Shown one piece after another: positions 9,457-19,493 of a stretch of 64,000 nucleotides of DNA. Both the position numbers and the translations under genes were made by a program. The stretch comes from Rebecca billardiae RCC1528. Taxonomy: Eukaryota > Protista > Haptophyta. The stretch is from assembly GCA_965240325.2 (NCBI GenBank), contig OZ251230.1:2418001-2482000 (forward strand), written 5' to 3'. The first letter of the stretch is position 1. The number at the start of each line of letters is the position of its first letter. The notes below the pieces were generated by a model, which saw nothing but the letters and a program-made list of their open reading frames with translations, was not told the DNA's origin and searched no databases.

Positions 9457-12400
9457 ATGAAGAAGCGGACGGGAGCGCTGTTCCTCGTCGCGCTCGCCGC
9501 GCATCGAGCGGACGGCGGGTCGTTCTGGACGCGAGCGCGCAGCGCGCGCCCCTCCGGAGCCGATCTCGACACGGATGGTGGCCCCGCGGAGGACATGGTT
9601 GTGCCGCACAGCATGCCGGGCGCCGGTCCGCGGCTGCTGCGCGGCCTGCGCTCGCGACGGCCGGCTGCAAGCGCCGTGCGCTTCCGCAAGGCGGACGTGG
9701 GCGCGTTCAAGGAGTGCATCGATCGCGTTGCCGACCACCCCGGTGGCCCGCTTGCGCTGATGGCGGTGCGTGCCCCGCCGAGGCTGGCGCGTTGCGCGCG
9801 GCGCTGCGCGCGCGCGGCGCTCCCCGCGCGCGCGCCGCCGCTCAGCAGTGCGCGTCCCCCGCGCGCGTGCGCGCGCGCGCGCGCTCGCAGCTGTTCCTGT
9901 ACATCCAAAACATCCGCGCGGACCTCTCCGACCCGGAGCGTCGGCTCGTGTGCCTCCTCAGCCCCACGTTCACGTCCTGCGTCGGTGCGGTTCCGGGCAG
10001 TCTCGCGGCTTTGCAGGCGGCGGGCTTCACCGCGACGCACCAGGCGCACGACGGCACGCCGTACCTGCTCATGCCCGTGGCGAACGCGCGGCAGCTCGCC
10101 CTGCTCGACCGCGAGCTCCGCGAGCGGCTGCACCTCCCGCCGGGCCCGGTCCCGGCCGGCTTTGCCCAGAGCCAGCTTCCGGGCGCTCGGGTGGGGGACC
10201 CGGCCGCGCTGCGGGACGTGCTGCGCTCGATCAAGACGGCGGTGAACGCGACGCGCGCGATGCACACGATGCTCGGCTACGCGCGCGCGGTCAAGGCGCG
10301 GCCGCACGACCCGCGCTTCCGCCTCGTGCACATGTTCAATCGGTGCGCGCGCGCGCGCCGCGCCGCGCGACGCATTCTGCGTAGCCGGAGGTTCTGCTGC
10401 GCGCCCATGCCGGCCGGCGGCGCGCACTGGCGCGACGCGCACAGCCGCCTCCGACGCCTCGCCTCCCCTCCCTCCTCCACGCGCGCGCGCCTCGCCGCGC
10501 CCCGCCCCGCCCGCCTCTCCGCGCGCCCCGCGCGCGCAGCCAATTCCTCGAGACGGTGGGCTCGGTGCCGCGCGGCTTGGACGCGATGCGCGCTCTCGGC
10601 TTCACCGCCACGTTCCAGTCGGCGGACGGGTCTCCGTTCCTCGTGATGCCGGTGGTCGAGCTGAGCCTGCTGGCGCAGCTCGAGCGCGTGCTGCTCGACG
10701 AGCTGCCGCGCGCGTTCGCGTACGACCGCGTCTTCGGCGCGCGCGCGCGCGCAGCGGGGAGGCCGGCGCCGGAGGGCGCGGCGGAGGGCGCGGGCGACGG
10801 TCAGAACGGCGCGTCGGCGGATTCGCGGAAGCGGCGCGGCGCTGCGGCGGCGCGTGCCAAGCACGAGGGCGGTGAGCACGAGGGCGGCGCCGCGGCTGCT
10901 GGCGCCGGGCGCGACGGCGAGGAGGAGGAGGACGACGCCCTCTTCGCCGACGACGACCCCGCGGCGGCTGGCGACGCAGGCGCGCATCGTGCCGGCGGCT
11001 CCGATGGCGGCCGCAGCGGCCCGCCGGCGGACGGCGGCGGCGTCGGCGGCGGCGCGCAGTCACCGTGGGGCGGCTCGCGCGGCCAGCCGCTGCCACTGCC
11101 GCCGCCGGAGATCCTGCTCCGGGCGCTCTTCGCCTACGCGGTGGAGACCATCGTGCGCCTCGGCCTGCTGCGCCCGCAGATGGGCGGCGGCGGCGCGGAC
11201 GGCGCGGCCTGGCGTCCGGATGGCAGCAACGCGTCCGCGGACGGCGGCAACGCGAGCGCGAGCGGCGCGGGCGGCGCGGCCGGGCGGCAGCCGCCGCACG
11301 GCATGCCGCCGCCCGCTGTGCGCGTGATCTTCGGCCGCCCGCCGCCCGGCGCGATCCCGCTCGGCTCCATGGACCTCCCGCCATTTTTTGGCGGGCCCGG
11401 CGGCGCGGGCGGCAACGCGAGCGCCGCCGGCGGTCCGGGCGGCGACGGCGAGTCTGAGGGCGAGCTGTCCACCCTGGAGGCGAAGCTGAAGGGCGCGCAG
11501 CTGACGGCGGACGCGCGCGAGGTGGCGACGCGCGAGCTGCGCCGGCTGCGCCGCATGTCGCCGCAGCACTCCGACTACTCCGCCACCTTTGACGGAGGAG
11601 AAGGTCTCGATCGCGCGCACGCACCTGCTGCCCAAGCAGCTCAGCCGGCACGGGCTCGGCCCCGCCGAGATTGCAATCTCGGACGAGCTGCTGCAGCTGC
11701 TGGCTCGCAGGTACACGCGCGAGGCGGGGCTGCGCGAGCTCGAGCGCAAGCTGGCCGCGCTGTGCCGCGCGGTCGCCGCCGAGGTGGCCGAGGCGCAGGC
11801 GGACGAGCGCGACGACGAGGAGGAGCCGCCGCCGCCGCCGCCGCCCGAGCGCGCGCACGCGGCGGCGCGCGCGAACCGCACCGCCGCCGTGCCGCCCGCG
11901 CTCGCAGACCGCGTCGTCGTCGGCAGCGGCAGCCCGGCGGGCGGGACGAAAGCGCTTCGGTCGAGGGCGAAGGCGCTGCGCCGCGGTCGGCCCAACGTCC
12001 CGCCGCCGCCGCACGCCGAGACGGCCCCCGCCGCGCCGCCGGAGCCCGACGGTGCCGCCGCGGCGCGCGCTGGCCCGCCCGCGCCGCCGCCCGCGGCCGC
12101 GCGCGCTCCGGTCCAACTGACCGAGGAGAAGATCCGGGCGATCCTCGGTCCGGAGCCGTACCTGGACGAGGCGGCGGAGCGGCTCTCGAAGCCGGGCGTG
12201 GCGATGGGCCTGGCGTACACGGCGGTGGGCGGCGACCTCCTCTTCATCGAGGCTAGTAAGATGGCCGGAACCGGCAAGGTCGAGCTGACCGGCAGGCTCG
12301 GAGAAGTGATGCGCGAGTCGGCGCACACGGTGCGTCCGCCCCGGCCCCGGCCCCCGGCCCACGCGCGTCCGTCCCGGCCGGTGCCGCGCGCGGGCCCGCC

Positions 12401-13214
12401 CCGCGCCGCGCGCGCCGGGCCGGCCGCGCTCGACGCCGCTCGCGCGCGTTCGGAAGGCGGCGGCGTGCGCGCGCGCCTCACGCGCGCGCGCCCGCCGCGC
12501 GCTGCCTGCGCGCGCGCGCCGCCGCCCCGCGCGCCCCCCGCCGCCGCGCGCGCACAGGCGCTCTCGTGGATCAGATCGCACGCGCTCGAGCTCGGCCTGG
12601 TGAGCAACGGCTCGCAGCAGCTGCTCAACGGCACGGACGTGCACCTGCACTTCCCGGCGGGGGCGGTGCCGAAGGACGGGCCCTCGGCGGGCGTGACGAT
12701 CGCGAGCGCGCTCGTGTCCATGCTGCGAGGCGTTCTGTGCCGCTCCGACACGGCGATGACCGGGGAGATCACGCTGCGCGGACACGTGCTGCCCGTCGGC
12801 GGGATCAAGGAGAAGGTGGTAGCCGCGCACCGCGCCGGGCTGCGCCGCGTGATCCTGCCGGAGAAGAACCGGAAGGACCTGAGCGAGCTGCCCGACTACG
12901 TGCGCAGCGACATGCAGTTTGAGTTCGCCACCGACGTGCGGGACGTACTGCGGCATGCGCTCGAGGGCGCTGACGTGGACGCCGCTGCCGGCGACCCGGG
13001 GGCGGGCGGCGCGCCCAAGCCCGGCGGCGATGCGGACGGCGCCGGGCAGCCGCCGGCCGCGCGAGACGACGGCGGGCCGCCCGAGGGCGATGCGCCGGGT
13101 CCGGACCGCCGCTCGCCGCCTGCCATCCGGCGCGACGTGCCGCTGCCGCCGGCGTCGGTGCCGCAGCCGCCGATCGCGCACGCCTCTCGGGCGGACCGCA
13201 GTCCGGTCGCCTGA
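9457..13214 (+). CDS. Signal peptide + two PUB-like domains + Lon protease (S16) with the AAA+ core absent; frame break at ~11585 (introns 9766-9890, 10343-10539, 12330-12557)
   Basis: Lon motifs: RELRRLRRMSPQHSDY, EEKVSIARTHLLPKQL, YTREAGLRELER, GVAMGLAYT..GG, PKDGPSAG (catalytic Ser), AMTGEITLRG.VLPVGGIKEK (catalytic Lys). No Walker A/B between 11580 and 11590. Two repeats of LY..NI...P.RR.V.L....F...VG.VPG.L..L.A.GF. Confidence 0.75.
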
Positions 13215-13608
13215 CGCCCGAACGATGACAGCAGAGGCAGTCTGGAGCTGACCGTCGCGCCACAGAGTCGACACGTGAGATGCCGTGATGGGCCTGTTGC
13301 GTGTGCACCGACAGACAGACGAGGACTCGCTACTGCTACCAACGGCGACCGAGTTCAGAGTGGGGAGAATCGGCTCTGCTGATCATGAGCTCCCGCGGGA
13401 AAGTTCAGCAAAGTTCCACACCACGAGCAGGGTTCGGCTTATTTTTCGGGACCCTCCCGCCCTCGGCGGCGACACGCGCGGCGGAGGACTCGGCGACGAG
13501 AGCGCGTCTTCGTGCGCGCGTGGCTGCGGCGGCCGGCTGCACGCGCGCGCGCCATCTCCCCGCTTGAGCACGCGTCCTCCACGCCCACCCAGCCGCGCGG
13601 GACCCGCC

Positions 13609-16600
13609 ATGCCGCCGCCATCGACGTCGGCGGCGCCGCGGTCGCGCTTTGCCCGTACTCACTTTGACCTCGCGAGTGCGACGAGCTTGTCGGCGCCGGC
13701 GTCGATGATCGCCTCGCCGGTCGAGAAGTCGCCGCCGCCGCCGGCGGAGGGCGGGGGCGCCGCATCGCCCGTCCCCCGACCCGTCCCGCGCAAGATCCGG
13801 CAGCAGCTCAGGGACATGAAGGACCTCGCGATCCCGAGCGCCATCGGGACCGACGGCGTGCCTCGCAAGCTCAGGCACGACTCGGGCCGGATCGAGTCGC
13901 CGACGCCGAGCGGCACGGGCGGTGCGGCGCCTCGCGAGCTGCGCGAGCACGGCTCGGCCCGGCGCGTCTCGGACCCGCTCCCCGCCAAGCCCCGAGAGCT
14001 GCGGCAGCACGACTCGATGCGCGAGGGACTCACGCTGGCCGGGCTCAGCCCGCCTCGGCCTCCGCCTGCGCTGCCGCTGCCGGCGGCGCCAGAGGCGGCC
14101 GTGGCGGCGCCCGCGGCGGCGGCGTCGCCGCCCTCGCACTCGCCGCGCTCGCCGCGCTCGCCGGCCGCGCCCCGCACGCCCGAGCCGAGGCTGCCGCCGC
14201 CGCGCGCGCGGCCGTGGCCGCATCAGCAGCTGCCCGAAGCCGGCCCGGCGAGCGGCGGCGGCGCGGCGCGCGGCGCGCGGCCGCGTCCGCTGCTGCGCTC
14301 GCCCTCGCAGCTGGTCGCGGCGGTGAGCGTGACGCGCTTCGTCAACCCGCTGATGCTCACGCTCGCGCTCGCGACGGCGTTCATGGGCGTCGTCAGCTGC
14401 GACGCCGGCCGCGTCCTCCTCGCGTCTGTGGACATCGCGCTGCGCTGGCAGCTCGCCACGCTGGGCGCGGTCGACGGCGCGGCGCTGGGCTGGCGGCGCG
14501 GCGTGCAGAAGGCGGCGCGCGGCGTGCTGACGGCGGCGATCGGCGTGCCCATCGCGATCGCGACGGGCGGCGACCCGCTCGCGCACCTCGATGTGTACGT
14601 GCGCGCGGCCGGGCACGCGCCGTTTCCGTTTGGGGACGGGCTCGCCGTCCCAGACTACGATCTCGTGAGCGAGATTGTGATGGGCGCGGAGCAGCCGCGC
14701 CGGCCGACGGTGCTGGCGCACCCGCTGCTGGTCGGGGACCCGATGCCGCGCGCGTGCATGCGGCGGGACACGCTCATCTTCCTGCCGTCCGGGCACGAGC
14801 ACACGGCCATCCGGACCCTTGTCCACGCGGCCGTCCCCGGCTTCAGCTGGCCCGCGGCCGAGCCGCCGCCTCTCGAGCTGCCTCGCGAGGGCATGCTGCC
14901 TTCGGCGCGGCCGTCGGCGCGGGCGGGGCCGGGCGCCGACGCGGGGGCGGCGCCGACGGCCGAGCCGCCGAGCGCGGGCGCCGAGCCGCCCCCGACGAAC
15001 GCGAGCGCGGTACGCGAGGCTGTTCTGTACAATCTGTTCCGGCGCATGACCGGCGCGCGGCCAGACGTTCGCACCGCCGCGGCGATGGCGGCTTACTACG
15101 AGCACCTGCCGCTGTGCATGCTCGGGCTGCGCGGCGCGGAGACGGTCGAGGCGCGCGCGACCGTCGCGGCGGGCGTGCTCCGCTCGCCGAGCGGCGCGCG
15201 CCTCGCCGAGCTCTGCGAGGTGCACGGCTGCGACGTCCCGGCACTCGCCCAGCAGCTTGCAGACGGTTTATTGTTTGCGGGCGGGTACGGCACGACCCAC
15301 CTGGCGCTGCACACGCTCGAGCGCATCCGCTCCGACCCGGCGCGGTACGTGCCGCAGTGGGCGAGCGCGCCGCGCGAGTTCCTCCTCGAGTCCGCGCGGC
15401 TCGACCCGCCCGTGCTCAGCGTCACGGCACTCGCCCCCGCGGCCGGTCTGTCCGTGCGCTCGGGCGCGCGCGGCGGCGGCGCGCCGATCGAGCTGGCTCC
15501 CGGCGTGCCGATCACGCTGCTGCTCTCGCACGCCAACCGCGACGGCGGCGCGTTCCACCGGCCGGCGGCGTTCGAGCCTCGGCGGCGCGAGCTCGCCAAG
15601 GTCCTCTCGTGGAACGGGCTCGAGGGCGCGGTGCGCGCGGGCACGGCGCCGCGCGGCTGCCCCGGGTACGAGTTGTCGCTCGAGATTGCTCGCCAGATTA
15701 TAAACGCGTCGCTGCCCGAGCCGGACTCGGCCGGAGTGGCGCCGCTCGAGGGCGGCGGCGCGTGGCAGCTGCGCGCGGAGGCGGCGCGCGAGGGCCGCGG
15801 CGCGTCCTCGCGCGCGCAGCGCGGCGCCGCCGCCCCGCGCTTCCAGGACTCCCGCCAGTTCGCGCACACGTACATCGCCTGGGGCCTCGGCTGCCTGGTA
15901 AGCGGCACGCTTCTTCCGGTCGTGGTCCGGCGGCTGGACGGGCCGGCGACGACGTCGGTGATGATGTTCAGCAACACGCAGCAGGGGAACGTGCTCGGCT
16001 GGCTCGCGCTGACGCAGCGGCTCAAGGTCGCCGACCTCTACCTGCCCGGCGAGTCCGGCCTCGTCCGGCTCAAGAACTGGATCGGGCTGTTGCATTACAC
16101 GGCCAACGTCGTGTCGGCTTACACTTGGATCCGGCTGTGGGTGACGCTCAAGTACCAGGGGCGGCGCGCGGAGGGCCTGGCCGAGTCGGCGGCGGCGCTG
16201 CGCGCGTGCGCGCTCATCGCGCTGCTCCCGCCCGCGCTGTACGCCGCGCTCGGCGACGAGTACCCGCGGCGCTGCCTCTCCGCCATCGCACTCTCCGCGT
16301 ACATTCCTGCCGGTGTGCTTGCTGTCGTCGGCTCGGTGGTGTTCTGGCGCGACCACGGCAGGCGACACATCGTGCTGGCGGCGGGGCTGCTCTCGTGGGT
16401 GGGGATCGTGCAGATGGCGCTCGAGGCGCTCGACTTCCCGGACGTGCTCGCGCTCGTCGTGCACGCCATCCACGCGCTGGCCGGCGGCACGCCCGCGCCC
16501 GGCGCCGAGCTCGATTTTGACGAAGCCCTCGAGGGCCTGGCGGCGCGTGCGCCGCTGCGCGCGGCCGCGGTGAGCGCGCTGAGCTCGGCGTTTCCGCTCG

Positions 16601-19493
16601 TGCTACTCGCGCTGCTGTGGTGCTCCGCGCTGGTGATGGACGGGCAGCTGACGGAGGACGTGGCGTACCCGACGCCGCGGCAGATGCGCAGGGTCGCCGC
16701 CGTCAAGTCCGCCCTCCCGTTTGTGTGCGTCGCGCTTGTGCTGTGCGTGCACCGAGCGCTGGTCCCCGCGCTCGCGAGTGACATCACGGGCTGCGCGCGC
16801 GACGCGCGGCTCCTCGGGGAGCACGCGGCGCGGTGCGAGGCGGTGCTGCACGATGGCGGCGCGGCTGCGCTCGATGGGCTGCGCTCGGCGCTCGACGCCG
16901 CCACGCCGAGCCCGGCCAACGCGACGGCGCTCGGCGCCGACGACGAGGGCGGCGCGGCCGGCGCCGAGGCCGCCGCAGCCGCCGCCTCCGGCGCGCAGCG
17001 GGACGCGCCGCCCGCGCAGCAGCAGCAGCCACGCAGCGGCTCGGAGGCTTCGGCGGAGGCGGCGGCGGAGGCGGTGGACGTGGCGGCGGCGGAGGCGGTG
17101 GACGTGGCCGAGGCGGCGGCGCAGGCGCAGGCGCTCGCGGCGGAGCTGCACGCCGCCGCGATGAGCACGGCGGCTCCAGCGATCGCCGAGCTCCCTCAGG
17201 CCGAGCTGCCATCACAGCCTCCGGCTGTGAACGGCAGCGCGCCGCCCGACGACGCGCGCGCGTGCGCCCACGACCCGACCGCCGCGCTCGACTCGCACAC
17301 GCGCCTCTTCTACGTTCTGATCCGGATGCTGGACGACGGCGCCGCGCCAGACGCCTCAATGGTGGGCGTGCCGCGCGACCGCGCCGCCCATCCCGGCGGC
17401 GGCGGCGGCGCGGCGGCGGCGGCGGCGGCGGCTGGCGGCAGCGCGGCGGCGACACCCGCCGCCGCGGCGGCTGCGGCGGCGCGCGGCGCGCCGCCCACGC
17501 CCATGCTCTCGCGCGAGGTCTTCCGCGCGGAGGGCGGGCGGAGCCTATGGGTGCCAACTTTTGACGAGGACGAGTCGCTCGACACGACGTCCTCATTGGC
17601 CAATGAGCTGTTCGACCGTTACGCCATGTCCGCGACGTTTCACCCGCTCGTGGACTCGGAGGTGCCGTGGGCGCCGCCCTCGCCGGCGGCGGCGGCGCCG
17701 GTGGTGGGCGGCGCGGCCGTGGTGGGCGGCACGGCGGCGGGAGCGCCGAGCGAGGCGGCGGCGACGAGCGCGGCGACCTCCAGCGCGGCGGCCATCATGG
17801 ATCGGCTGCATGACAGGCTGCGCGCGCTGCCCACGCCGCTGTACAACTACTCGCACGCGCTGCACGCCGAGCTGCGACGGCCGCGGCGCGTGGGGGCGCG
17901 CCGCCGCCGCCCGTGCAACGGCGGCGGCGCCGCCGCCTGCCGCCCGGCGGCTGGCGGCGGCGCCGAGGGCGCGCCGCCGGCTGGCGCGCCGCCGCCGCCG
18001 GCCGAACCGCCGCGGTTTCAGCCCCTGCTGGCCGACGAGGCGCTCGCGCACATGGCGTTCGGCGGGCTCGGCGCGCACCTGGCGCGCCGCGCGCGCACGC
18101 CCGCCGAGGCCGCCGCCTCCGCCGCCGCGCTCCTCGCCTCCGGCGCGCGCGCGTGCGTGCCCGGACGCATCCCGGAAACTTCCGCGTTCGAGCTCGACCT
18201 CTCGTGGATGGGCGCTCTCACGGTGAGGCCTCCGTTCGAGCGCTACGGCGCCGTCGCCTTCTTCGACGCGCGGCAGCGGGTGCTGGCGATCTGGTGGTGC
18301 CACGGCGCCGCGCTCGTGTACCCGGGTGCGCGCCCCCGCCGCGCTTCGCGCCCGCCGCGCCGCACGCGCGGCGCCGCGCCGCCGCGCCGGCCGGGCGCCG
18401 GTGACACCGCGCGCCGCCGCGCCGCGCGCCCGCCGCCGCGCGCGCCCGCGCGTGCGCAGGCGACCGTCGATGGGCGCACGCCAAGTGGGCGCTTCGCTCG
18501 AGCCTGCTCTCCGGCGTCACGCTGCGCGACCACCTCGCCGCGACGCACCTCGTCATCGCCAACGCGCTCGCCACCGCCTCGCGGGCGCAGCTCGGCAGCG
18601 CACACCCGGTCCGCCGGCTGCTGAAGCCGTTCACGTATCGAACTATCGCTGTCAACCGCGCGTCGCGCAACCTGCTGACGCAGGAGCTGTCTCTGCTGCA
18701 CCGCACAGTGGCGCTGGACGAGCGCGGGCTGCACGCGGCGTTCAACGCGTCGTTCGAGACCACCCGCGCCGGCTTCGCGCCGCTCTCCGACGGCGTCCTC
18801 TTCTCGGCCGAGCCGCCGCTCGACGCGGGCGAGGCACGCACACCGTTTGCGCACGACCTGAGGCGCTACCGGGCGGTCGTGCGCCGGCTGGTGGACGGCT
18901 ACGTGCGCGAGTACTATGCGGACGACGCGGCGGTGCTGGCGGACGTGCCGCTCGGCGCGTTCTGGGCGACGCTGCGCGCCTTCTTCGCCTCCATCCCGCC
19001 GCTGCCTCCCGCCGAGCCGCCGGCCGCGCCCGCGCCGCCCAGTCACGGCGGCGCGCGCCGGTGGTGGCGCTCGCGCGGCGCGGCCCATGAGCCGGACGGC
19101 GGCGCGCGCGAGATGGTGTGCCGCGCGCTGACGTCGTTCATCGTGCACGTCACCGCGGTGCACAAGCAGGTCGGCGCCGCGGGCGAGTACGTCGCCGACC
19201 CGCGCGTCGCGGGCGGCAAGATCCGGCCGGGCTCGGAGCTGGCGGACGTGCAGGCGGCCGTGCAAGTGCTGTCGATCGCGCTAGTCACGAGCTTCAAGCA
19301 GCCGATGCTGCTGGACGACTTCACGCACCTGCTGCTGCGCGACGCGCACTTTGGCCGCACGCGCCGCCTCTTCGACGAGTTCCAGCGCGAGCTCGTCGCG
19401 CTGGCCGACGCGGTCGAGCGGCGCAACGCGCGCAGGCGCTTCAAGCTGAACGCGTTCAACCCGCGCCGCCTCGCGTGCTCAGTCTCGATCTGA
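13609..19493 (+). CDS. CYP74-like cytochrome P450 - multi-pass membrane domain - lipoxygenase fusion; join(13609..18325,18460..19493), ~1916 aa
   Basis: P450: HTAIR C-helix, FAGGYGTT I-helix, ESAR (ExxR), ANRD..AF..P..FEPRR, and SWNG-x10-PRGCPG heme Cys at 15658. Hydrophobic helices at ~15870-16780. LOX after the GT-AG intron: HLAATH (18531), HPVRRLLKPF, TAVHKQVG (19161), C-terminal SVSI-stop. Confidence 0.82.

What the first reader, a model, noticed from the sequence alone, without database searches (positions are those of the whole stretch)
13609..19493. CYP74-like P450 - membrane domain - lipoxygenase fusion: candidate single-chain oxylipin synthase
Seen: one stop-free frame runs from 13609 through a complete P450 fold (~14590-15710), a run of TM helices (~15870-16780) and the start of a LOX-like region. 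A phase-1 GT..AG intron (18326-18459) joins it to an exon with the LOX iron-ligand motifs HLAATH, HPVRRLLKPF, TAVH and the C-terminal Ile (CSVSI*). Established: LOX makes fatty-acid hydroperoxides, and CYP74 enzymes (AOS/HPL/DES/EAS) convert them without reductase. The fusions I know of are coral/cyanobacterial catalase-like AOS-LOX and fungal dioxygenase-P450 (linoleate diol synthase); I do not know of a characterised P450-TM-LOX architecture. Inference: a membrane-anchored enzyme that channels PUFA hydroperoxide to an oxylipin.
Basis: partly seen in the sequence, partly recalled or inferred. Interest (0 to 1): 0.95.

Follow-up and report, generated by a model that had tools for sequence, protein, structure and literature searches.

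The report
P450–membrane–lipoxygenase fusion enzyme gene
A GC-rich alga, probably a haptophyte, encodes one long protein that joins a divergent cytochrome P450, a bundle of membrane helices and a lipoxygenase; dozens of unnamed proteins in public data share this layout, I found no paper describing it, and it is probably a single-chain, membrane-embedded maker of oxidised-fatty-acid signals.

Summary
One strongly GC3-biased frame runs from 13609 to 18325. A 134-nt GT..AG intron (18326-18459) joins it to 18460-19493, giving a 1916-aa product.

- **Lipoxygenase (LOX) C-terminus: confirmed.** PF00305 scores 38 bits; the family profile hits solved LOX structures at E 5e-31, aligned to the terminal Ile.
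- **CYP74 membership: not shown.** It shares a long haem loop and lacks the I-helix acid/Thr pair, but has no specific CYP74 sequence affinity.
- **Fusion: genuine and conserved.** 29 representative proteins carry both domains in the same order, 18 of them with 3-8 hydrophobic segments between. Three sit as uninterrupted ORFs on long eukaryotic contigs. A full-length family HMM aligns collinearly and crosses the splice junction without a gap.
- **Open points.** No RNA runs were listed. The canonical fourth LOX iron ligand is deleted family-wide. The membrane domain has no detectable relatives.

Most likely function (inferred): LOX makes a fatty-acid hydroperoxide that the P450 rearranges. I found no published description.

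The parts
13609..18325 (+). Exon 1 (aa 1-1572 plus the first base of codon 1573): N-extension, anchor helix, P450, membrane bundle, linker, first part of LOX
   Evidence: Continuous GC3 of 0.87-0.96 in this frame. The family HMM aligns collinearly, hmm 10-672 to aa 245-952 at E 6.5e-101.
18326..18459 (+). Intron, 134 nt, GT..AG, phase 1
   Evidence: Ends read. GC3 changes frame here. The spliced junction PG|D..WAHAKW matches intron-free homologues without a gap.
18460..19493 (+). Exon 2 (aa 1573-1916 plus stop): C-terminal two thirds of the LOX catalytic domain
   Evidence: PF00305 E 8.6e-10, 38.2 bits against a cut-off of 23.6. PDB LOX hits at E 2.5e-9. Family profile at E 5e-31.
13609..14337 (+). 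Lineage-specific Pro/Ala/Arg-rich N-terminal extension (aa 1-243); the true start codon is uncertain
   Evidence: High GC3, but no counterpart in homologues, whose HMM begins at aa 245.
14338..14406 (+). Hydrophobic helix before the P450 (aa 244-266), a likely signal anchor
   Evidence: Hydropathy peak. Several homologues have the same helix at their N-terminus.
14560..15723 (+). Cytochrome P450 fold domain (aa 318-705)
15274..15297 (+). I-helix motif FAGGYGTT (aa 556-563): Tyr-Gly replaces the acid/Thr pair of oxygen-activating P450s
   Evidence: Aligned to AGQETT of CYP150A6. The family motif is FAG-x-x-GT.
15388..15399 (+). K-helix ExxR (E594, R597)
   Evidence: Invariant in 25 sequences.
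15610..15666 (+). Haem-binding loop W668...PRGC684PG, with 16 residues from Trp to the Cys ligand
   Evidence: The Trp aligns with the canonical Phe, which lies 7 residues before the Cys. Spacing is 16 in most members. Cys is nearly invariant.
15871..16779 (+). Polytopic membrane domain: 7 clear hydrophobic helices, possibly 8
   Evidence: Hydropathy. Eight long helices in the full-length homologue model, block pLDDT ~55-90. Poorly conserved, with no conserved His.
16780..17541 (+). Ala/Gly/Pro-rich linker with short islands of family similarity; may hide in-frame introns
   Evidence: HMM islands at aa 1216-1257. Non-periodic, very GC-rich stretches near 17329-17500.
17542..18325 (+). N-terminal part of the LOX catalytic domain (aa 1312-1572), with a low-complexity insert near 17929-18050
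   Evidence: HMM 817-866 to aa 1312-1360, and HMM 890 onward from aa 1474.
18531..18548 (+). HLAATH (H1597, H1602): first two iron ligands
   Evidence: Invariant H24 and H29 of alignment A2. Aligned to HLLNTH of human ALOX12.
19161..19175 (+). HKQVG (H1807): third iron ligand; the canonical fourth ligand is absent
   Evidence: H234, V237 and G238 are invariant. A two-residue deletion removes 'NQ' of ALOX12 HAAINQG.
19488..19490 (+). C-terminal Ile1916, whose carboxylate is an iron ligand in LOX
   Evidence: Ends ...SVSI like most of the family. Aligned to the terminal Ile of ALOX12.

Best explanation
Positions 13609-19493 hold one two-exon gene for a ~1900-aa integral membrane protein. Its order is:
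1. a lineage-specific disordered N-extension;
2. an anchor helix;
3. a compact, divergent cytochrome P450;
4. a bundle of 7-8 membrane helices;
5. a low-complexity linker;
6. a PLAT-less lipoxygenase catalytic domain that ends in the iron-binding Ile.

**Shown:** the gene structure, the two folds, their conserved catalytic residues, and the conservation of the architecture in many other organisms.

**Inferred mechanism:**
- The LOX domain, held at the membrane by the helix bundle instead of a PLAT domain, oxygenates a polyunsaturated fatty acid (EPA, DHA or a C18 PUFA) to a hydroperoxide.
- The P450 lacks the acid/Thr pair needed to activate O2 and has no reductase partner in the chain.
- It would use that hydroperoxide directly, as CYP74, prostacyclin/thromboxane synthases and the P450 halves of fungal DOX-CYP enzymes do.
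- The product would be an allene oxide, epoxy alcohol, divinyl ether, diol or aldehyde.

The domain order is forced, because LOX needs a free C-terminus and any partner must therefore sit on its N-terminal side.
For: **Gene structure**
- One frame with continuous GC3, then a frame shift across a GT..AG intron.
- The ORF is far longer than composition allows.
- The full-length family HMM aligns collinearly with the spliced product and crosses the junction without a gap.

**LOX domain**
- Pfam hit above its cut-off.
- PDB hits at E 2.5e-9 for the single sequence and 5e-31 for the profile, aligned end to end to the terminal Ile.
- The homologue model matches Cyanothece LOX2 and human 5-, 12- and 15-LOX. 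It also matches a bacterial LOX cluster at TM 0.89.

**P450 domain**
- The 60 rows shown of 184 profile hits are P450s or P450-like proteins.
- Invariant ExxR and near-invariant Cys.

**Signs of non-monooxygenase chemistry**
- The I-helix acid/Thr pair is replaced by Tyr-Gly.
- The Trp-to-Cys loop is 16 residues, against 7 in canonical P450s.
- The highest Foldseek TM-scores are to CYP74 AOS/DES.
- No reductase or other redox domain was detected in the chain, and the membrane region has no conserved His.

**Functional coupling of the two domains**
- 29 representative clusters carry both domains, 18 with membrane helices between and 11 without.
- The fusion is an uninterrupted ORF on 242-kb, 89-kb and 41-kb eukaryotic contigs. 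It also fills gene-length contigs.

**Context**
- Haptophytes make enzymatic EPA/DHA oxylipins (PMC11432788).
Against: - No transcript evidence for this organism: no sequencing run was listed.
- No biochemical data exist for any family member.
- Pfam does not recognise the P450 in the window protein.
- Profile searches of solved structures show no specific CYP74 kinship.
- The long haem loop also occurs in BcmD, which to my knowledge is an ordinary monooxygenase. That feature alone therefore does not prove hydroperoxide chemistry.
- The canonical fourth LOX ligand is deleted. The window protein also lacks the polar residue that relatives carry one position later (Ala instead of Asn/Ser/Thr/Gln). 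Its LOX activity could be weakened or altered.
- The number of membrane helices (7 or 8) is unresolved. The two catalytic domains may therefore not face the same side of the membrane.
- The Ala/Gly-rich linker may contain unrecognised in-frame introns.
Confidence: 0.6

Rival explanations
1. The fusion is real, but the P450 is a conventional oxygen-activating monooxygenase. It would epoxidise or hydroxylate fatty acids or LOX products, served by a separate reductase, and would not be a hydroperoxide-rearranging enzyme.
For: - The closest sequence matches are bacterial class-I-type P450s.
- For the haem loop, the closest matches are BcmD-like P450s with the same long loop.
- No specific CYP74 signal appears in the profile searches of solved structures.
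Against: - The I-helix acid/Thr pair used for O2 activation is missing across the family.
- Fusion to a hydroperoxide-producing enzyme is conserved in 29 clusters, with or without the membrane domain.
- No redox-partner domain was detected.
Confidence: 0.2
2. The LOX domain, with its altered iron sphere, is not a classical dioxygenase. It could be a hydroperoxide isomerase or lyase, like the multifunctional red-algal LOX. Alternatively one of the two domains is mainly structural or regulatory.
For: - The fourth ligand is deleted family-wide, and the window protein also lacks the neighbouring polar residue.
- Two relatives (P0024, P0048) have lost the P450 Cys.
- A multifunctional LOX is known in Pyropia (PMC11507377, listed).
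Against: - Three His and the C-terminal Ile/Val are conserved.
- ExxR and Cys are conserved in nearly all P450 domains.
- To my knowledge, the fourth ligand is the weakest and most variable in known active LOXs. Diatom LOX groups vary it too (PMC10968607).
Confidence: 0.12
3. The fusion is a gene-model artefact: two or three adjacent genes, or a pseudogene, that merely share an open frame in very GC-rich DNA.
For: - DNA of this composition gives ~500-codon open runs by chance.
- Other frames here carry 600-890-aa ORFs.
- No RNA data are available.
Against: - GC3 never drops to the intergenic level between the domains.
- One HMM alignment spans the anchor helix, the P450 and the first membrane helices.
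- The same order occurs in single ORFs in many other organisms.
- Catalytic residues are intact.
Confidence: 0.04

Closest known systems
Coral and cyanobacterial allene oxide synthase-lipoxygenase fusion (catalase-related AOS + 8R-LOX; PDB 3dy5, 3fg1)
   Same: - A haem domain sits N-terminal to a LOX in one chain.
- The LOX product is the substrate of the haem domain.
- LOX keeps its free C-terminal Ile.
- The coral LOX is among the PDB matches.
   Different: - The haem domain there is a catalase-fold protein with a Tyr ligand; here it is a Cys-ligated P450 fold.
- The coral enzyme is soluble or peripheral with a PLAT domain; this one has a 7-8-helix membrane domain and no PLAT.
Fungal dioxygenase-P450 fusions (linoleate diol synthases, PpoA, DOX-AOS)
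   Same: - A fatty-acid dioxygenase is fused to a P450 that isomerises the hydroperoxide without a reductase.
- The P450 lacks the usual oxygen-activation machinery (established knowledge).
   Different: - The dioxygenase there is a haem peroxidase/COX-like domain, not a LOX.
- The order is reversed, with the P450 at the C-terminus.
- There is no membrane bundle.
CYP74 clan (AOS, HPL, DES, EAS; PDB 2rch, 3dsi, 3dam)
   Same: - P450 fold.
- About nine extra residues in the haem loop.
- No I-helix acid/Thr pair.
- Highest Foldseek TM-scores, 0.60-0.65, and the longest VIA alignments, 336-346 residues.
   Different: - No specific sequence affinity.
- By eye, the catalytic I-helix Asn of CYP74 corresponds to Ala (from memory, not tested).
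- To my knowledge CYP74 enzymes are stand-alone proteins and are not fused to LOX.
PLAT-less prokaryote-type lipoxygenases (Cyanothece CspLOX2, PDB 5med; myxobacterial LOX)
   Same: - Best structural matches of the LOX domain: TM by target 0.64-0.67 and 0.89 to a bacterial LOX cluster.
- No beta-barrel PLAT domain.
   Different: - Those are ~530-570-aa soluble enzymes with the canonical His/His/His/Asn/Ile sphere.
- Here the Asn is deleted, and the domain is tethered to a membrane bundle and a P450.

Membership tests
Lipoxygenase (PF00305) | Sequence match above the family's curated threshold | tested here: met
   Exon 2: 38.2 bits against a cut-off of 23.6, E 8.6e-10. Family profile against solved LOX structures: E 5e-31.
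Lipoxygenase (PF00305) | LOX catalytic-domain fold | tested here: met
   Tested on homologue P0026 (pLDDT 82). Foldseek gives LOX structures at E 1e-14, and TM 0.89 to a LOX cluster. The window protein aligns to the family at E 2.4e-91 and 5.2e-59.
Lipoxygenase (PF00305) | His-x4-His, third His and C-terminal Ile iron ligands | tested here: met
   H1597, H1602 and H1807 are invariant in the family. The terminal Ile aligns to that of ALOX12.
Lipoxygenase (PF00305) | Fourth protein ligand (Asn/His/Ser) four residues after the third His | tested here: not met
   A two-residue deletion removes it: HxxV--G against HAAINQG of ALOX12. Gly is invariant there. The window also has Ala where relatives have Asn/Ser/Thr/Gln one position on.
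Lipoxygenase (PF00305) | N-terminal PLAT beta-barrel (eukaryotic LOX only; absent in many bacterial LOX) | tested here: not met
   No PF01477 hit. The preceding region is a helix bundle.
Cytochrome P450 superfamily (PF00067) | Sequence match above the Pfam threshold | tested here: not met
   No hit for the window at E up to 10. Only sub-threshold hits in homologues: P0002 at E 0.0068 and P0076 'weak'.
Cytochrome P450 superfamily (PF00067) | P450 fold | tested here: met
Cytochrome P450 superfamily (PF00067) | ExxR in the K helix and a Cys ligand in an R-x-C-x-G loop | tested here: met
   E594 and R597 are invariant. C684 lies in PRGCPG and is nearly invariant.
Cytochrome P450 superfamily (PF00067) | I-helix (A/G)Gx(D/E)T(T/S) oxygen-activation motif | tested here: not met
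   FAGGYGTT: Tyr replaces the acid and Gly replaces the Thr in the alignment to AGQETT of CYP150A6.
CYP74 clan | Insertion of about nine residues in the haem-binding loop | tested here: met
   Trp to Cys is 16 residues, against 7 in canonical P450s. This is not exclusive: BcmD-like P450s have it too.
CYP74 clan | Closer to CYP74 than to other P450 families | tested here: inconclusive
   Sequence profiles show no CYP74 among the 60 rows listed for the whole domain or the 23 haem-loop hits. Foldseek TM is highest for CYP74, but Z equals that of bacterial P450s.
CYP74 clan | Catalytic I-helix Asn (Asn321 of Arabidopsis AOS) | not tested
From memory of the motif F-N-x-x-G-G, the equivalent residue here is Ala.
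CYP74 clan | Turnover of fatty-acid hydroperoxides without O2, NADPH or a reductase | not testable with these tools
   Needs enzyme assays.
Catalase-related AOS-LOX fusion (coral type) | Catalase-fold haem domain N-terminal to the LOX | tested here: not met
   The N-terminal domain has a P450 fold.
Fungal DOX-CYP fusion | Haem-peroxidase/COX-like dioxygenase domain | tested here: not met
   The dioxygenase here is a LOX, and the order is P450 first.

The most novel reading that the evidence does not exclude
This is the first recognised natural P450-lipoxygenase fusion and the first lipoxygenase built into the membrane by its own polytopic domain. It would define a widespread, unnamed family of single-chain oxylipin synthases. 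The sources of its relatives point to marine and other protists; their organisms were not identified. The family would carry a new P450 lineage that independently arrived at CYP74-like, reductase-free hydroperoxide chemistry, and a LOX with a reduced iron-ligand set. It could account for enzymatic oxylipins in algae where the enzymes downstream of LOX are unknown.
Probability: 0.5. Interest if true: 0.85.

Novelty: new variant of a known kind. Interest (0 to 1): 0.76.

Why it matters
Fusions of a fatty-acid dioxygenase with a hydroperoxide-converting haem enzyme are textbook cases of substrate channelling. The known examples are the coral AOS-LOX and the fungal DOX-CYP enzymes. A P450-LOX version is a third, independent solution.

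- **A new kind of LOX anchoring.** To my knowledge, LOXs are described as soluble or peripheral proteins. Here the LOX is welded to its own 7-8-helix membrane domain.
- **A candidate gene family for algal oxylipins.** The downstream steps of oxylipin signalling and defence chemistry in marine phytoplankton are still poorly assigned to genes. This family offers concrete, testable candidates.
- **A convergence question.** The P450 would be a new lineage, and one can ask how often P450s have lost O2 activation to work on peroxides.
- **A missing ligand.** The deleted fourth iron ligand is a natural experiment on the LOX metal site.
- **Possible use.** A self-sufficient single-chain enzyme converting EPA or DHA to a defined oxylipin would interest biocatalysis.

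Tried and rejected
**No result**
- **Pfam on the P450 region.** Nothing found, even at E 10. A profile and a structure model were needed instead.
- **Word-indexed homologue search on exon 1, residues 300-1100.** Blank. Low-complexity words probably swamped the 8000 candidates, so the blank means nothing.
- **Sequencing runs.** None listed for 14600-19400 (RNA) or 15500-18500 (any kind). Read laying could therefore not be used, and there is no transcript evidence.

**Membership or idea rejected**
- **CYP74 membership.** No CYP74 appears among the rows shown in the whole-domain or haem-loop profile searches.
- **Membrane domain as cytochrome b561.** There is only a weak Pfam hint at E 0.11. The family alignment shows no conserved His.
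- **Membrane domain as styrene-oxide-isomerase-like or any other solved fold.** This followed a lead from scan note s1-338707. NCBIfam gave nothing meaningful. The PDB profile search returned only designed coiled coils, a composition artefact. ESM-Atlas feature scores were 0.71 or lower.

**Uninformative**
- **Poly-A tails on the gene-length contigs.** None visible, so I do not call them transcripts.
- **Literature.** No P450-LOX fusion was found. The library lacks most subscription papers.
Full report
**1. The observation**

The window is very GC-rich (0.75-0.78 around the locus), so long open frames need caution. Simulated sequence of the same composition gives longest stop-free runs of 505 +/- 111 codons, with a maximum of 1169 in 300 trials. 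The observed run is 1781 codons.

Codon-position composition is more telling.
- In the frame of the ATG at 13609, GC3 stays at 0.87-0.96 from about 13600 to 18325, with no dip between the proposed domains.
- The high-GC position then moves to the +1 frame until about 19450.
- Both flanks are flat at 0.6-0.7.

The proposed intron 18326-18459 starts GT, ends AG and is 134 nt. Splicing gives a 1916-aa product that ends ...CSVSI.

**2. The lipoxygenase half**

- Exon 2 alone passes Pfam's PF00305 threshold: 38.2 bits against 23.6.
- It hits mammalian, bacterial and coral LOX structures at E down to 2.5e-9.
- A profile of 19 family members reaches E 5e-31. It aligns end to end with human ALOX12, including the terminal Ile.
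- H1597, H1602 and H1807 are invariant in the family.
- The canonical fourth ligand is missing. Where ALOX12 reads HAAINQG, the family reads HxxV--G, a two-residue deletion that removes the Asn.
- Most relatives have a polar residue (Asn/Ser/Thr/Gln) one position after the Gly. The window protein has Ala there.
- There is no PLAT domain.
- In a full-length model of homologue P0026 (pLDDT 82), the C-terminal domain matches Cyanothece LOX2 and human 5-, 12- and 15-LOX. It also matches a bacterial PLAT-less LOX cluster at TM 0.89.

**3. The P450 half**

Pfam finds nothing in the window sequence, even at E 10. A single-sequence PDB search gives only a weak, in-register P450 hit at E 0.27.

An exhaustive HMMER search of 1.84 billion representatives with 14560-16800 found 223 relatives. 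A 25-sequence alignment of the N-domain (A1) has these features:
- an invariant ExxR;
- a near-invariant Cys in APRGCPG;
- an ANRDP..F..FDP.R meander.

As a profile, A1 hits 184 PDB sequences. The 60 shown are P450s or P450-like proteins, best E 9.4e-9. The AlphaFold model is confident (pLDDT 86.4, pTM 0.86).
- Foldseek returns at least 500 matches at E <= 0.001, and every row shown is a P450.

The domain is therefore a real P450, but a very divergent one.

**4. Is it CYP74?**

Two hallmarks are shared.
- **I-helix.** It reads FAGGYGTT. In the alignment to AGQETT of CYP150A6, Tyr-Gly replaces the acid/Thr pair.
- **Haem loop.** The Trp that aligns with the canonical Phe lies 16 residues before the Cys instead of 7.

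CYP74 enzymes also give the highest Foldseek TM-scores (0.60-0.65) and the longest VIA alignments.

Against membership:
- No CYP74 appears among the 60 rows shown for the whole domain or the 23 haem-loop hits.
- The haem loop's nearest sequence relatives are BcmD-like P450s with an equally long loop.

I therefore treat it as a new P450 lineage that works like CYP74 at best. I do not treat it as a member.

**5. The fusion is real and conserved**

Of the 148 best representatives that match the spliced protein, 29 carry both the P450-like and the LOX parts in the same order.
- Eighteen of them have 3-8 hydrophobic peaks between the two parts.
- Eleven more distant ones have no hydrophobic peak, or one at most, between them.
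- Most end in ...SVSI or ...SVAV.

A word-indexed search with P0001 returned relatives of 1215-1374 aa. Nine of them align over 93-100% of their length at 30-41% identity.

The genomic contexts agree.
- P0004, P0152 and P0157 are uninterrupted ORFs on 242-kb, 89-kb and 41-kb contigs. Their neighbours are eukaryotic genes such as kelch, DEAD helicase, SNARE, Arf and HSP70.
- P0001, P0096 and P0076 fill contigs of almost exactly gene length.

An HMM of 15 full-length relatives aligns collinearly with the window protein:

| HMM positions | Window residues | E-value | Note |
|---|---|---|---|
| 10-672 | aa 245-952 | 6.5e-101 | one alignment across the anchor helix, the P450 and the first membrane helices |
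| 890-1151 | aa 1474-1754 | 2.4e-91 | crosses the splice junction at aa 1573 without a gap |
| 1149-1281 | aa 1784-1916 | 5.2e-59 | reaches the C-terminus |

This validates both the gene model and the exact intron. None of these proteins comes from NCBI or UniRef with an informative name. An AlphaFold-DB cluster search does show a 1022-aa UniProt 'Lipoxygenase domain-containing protein' (A0A819GM49) whose residues 15-352 match the P450 model.

**6. The membrane domain**

- The window protein has seven clear hydrophobic segments between aa 755 and 1057, plus a possible amphipathic one.
- The P0026 model has eight long helices there, with block pLDDT of roughly 55-90.
- Sequence conservation is low: 20% mean identity, one invariant Gly and no conserved His. 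A haem-binding b561-type role is therefore unlikely.
- No Pfam, NCBIfam, PDB or ESM-Atlas relative was found.
- Its simplest role is to anchor the enzyme in the lipid that supplies its substrate, taking the place of the PLAT domain.
- Whether there are 7 or 8 helices decides if the two catalytic domains face the same side of the membrane. This stays open.

**7. What is specific to the window protein**

- A 243-aa Pro/Ala/Arg-rich N-extension has high GC3 but no counterpart in relatives. The true start may lie further downstream.
- Several Ala/Gly/Pro-rich inserts account for the extra ~600 residues.
- Two short stretches, about 17329-17500 and 17929-18050, are non-periodic and as GC-rich as the known intron. 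They could be in-frame introns.
- The gene follows a Lon protease gene that ends at 13214.
- Notes from other agents in this scan suggest the genome is a GC-rich haptophyte, possibly a pavlovophyte. I did not test that.

**8. Mechanism (inferred)**

LOX produces a PUFA hydroperoxide. The neighbouring P450 has a Cys-ligated haem but lacks the O2-activating residues, and no reductase domain was detected. It would rearrange that hydroperoxide.

The conserved pairing of the two domains, with or without the membrane module, is the strongest argument that they work on one pathway. The domain order follows from LOX's need for a free C-terminus.

Rival readings and the experiments that separate them are listed in their own sections.

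**9. Novelty**

Searches of the held literature found coral AOS-LOX fusions, fungal DOX-CYP fusions, multifunctional red-algal LOX and diatom LOXs of about 700 aa. They found no P450-LOX fusion and no integral-membrane LOX. The library is incomplete, so this is not proof of absence.

I rate the finding a new variant of a known kind: a bifunctional oxylipin-synthase fusion with a new domain combination and a new membrane module.

Noticed in passing
window 19161-19175; alignment A2: The whole P450-LOX family lacks the canonical fourth iron ligand because of a two-residue deletion (HxxV--G against HAAINQG). Relatives have Asn/Ser/Thr/Gln one residue later and often His/Gln two residues after the third His. 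The window protein has Ala and Gln at these positions.
   Followed up: partly
P0076, P0086, P0089, P0096, P0099, P0126, P0134, P0140 (hits): A more distant subgroup joins the same P450-like domain directly to the LOX with no hydrophobic helices. These proteins end in ...SVAV or ...SVSV. P450-LOX coupling is therefore older or broader than the membrane module.
   Followed up: partly
P0024, P0048 (alignment A1): Two relatives of the P450 domain have lost the haem-ligand Cys (GEATG-PGY, TRPRG-PAY). They may be non-catalytic derivatives.
   Followed up: no
window 17329-17500 and 17929-18050: These stretches are non-periodic and extremely GC-rich. They encode Gly/Ala/Pro/Arg runs that interrupt family-conserved blocks, and their composition resembles the confirmed intron. 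They may be in-frame introns.
   Followed up: partly
window 13609-14337: A 243-aa low-complexity N-terminal extension has coding-like GC3 but no counterpart in any homologue. The homologues begin at the hydrophobic helix, so the start codon is uncertain.
   Followed up: partly
window 11589-13214 (+): The upstream neighbour is the C-terminal part of a Lon protease (Lon_C at E 4e-73, plus Lon_lid). It lies about 395 nt before the fusion gene's ATG.
   Followed up: partly
same genome, another piece (scan note s1-338707): Another first-reader note reports a LOX fused to three styrene-oxide-isomerase-like 4-TM modules in the same genome. If true, this alga tethers LOXs to different membrane modules. 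I found no SOI-like signal in the membrane domain studied here.
   Followed up: partly
AlphaFold DB cluster hits (A0A1Q9CWX0, A0A813D9V5, A0A814D9D6, R1EBP6, A0A819GM49): The closest structural relatives of this P450 domain in UniProt sit in multidomain, mostly uncharacterised proteins, some with unrelated automatic names. One 1022-aa 'Lipoxygenase domain-containing protein' has the P450-like fold at residues 15-352.
   Followed up: no
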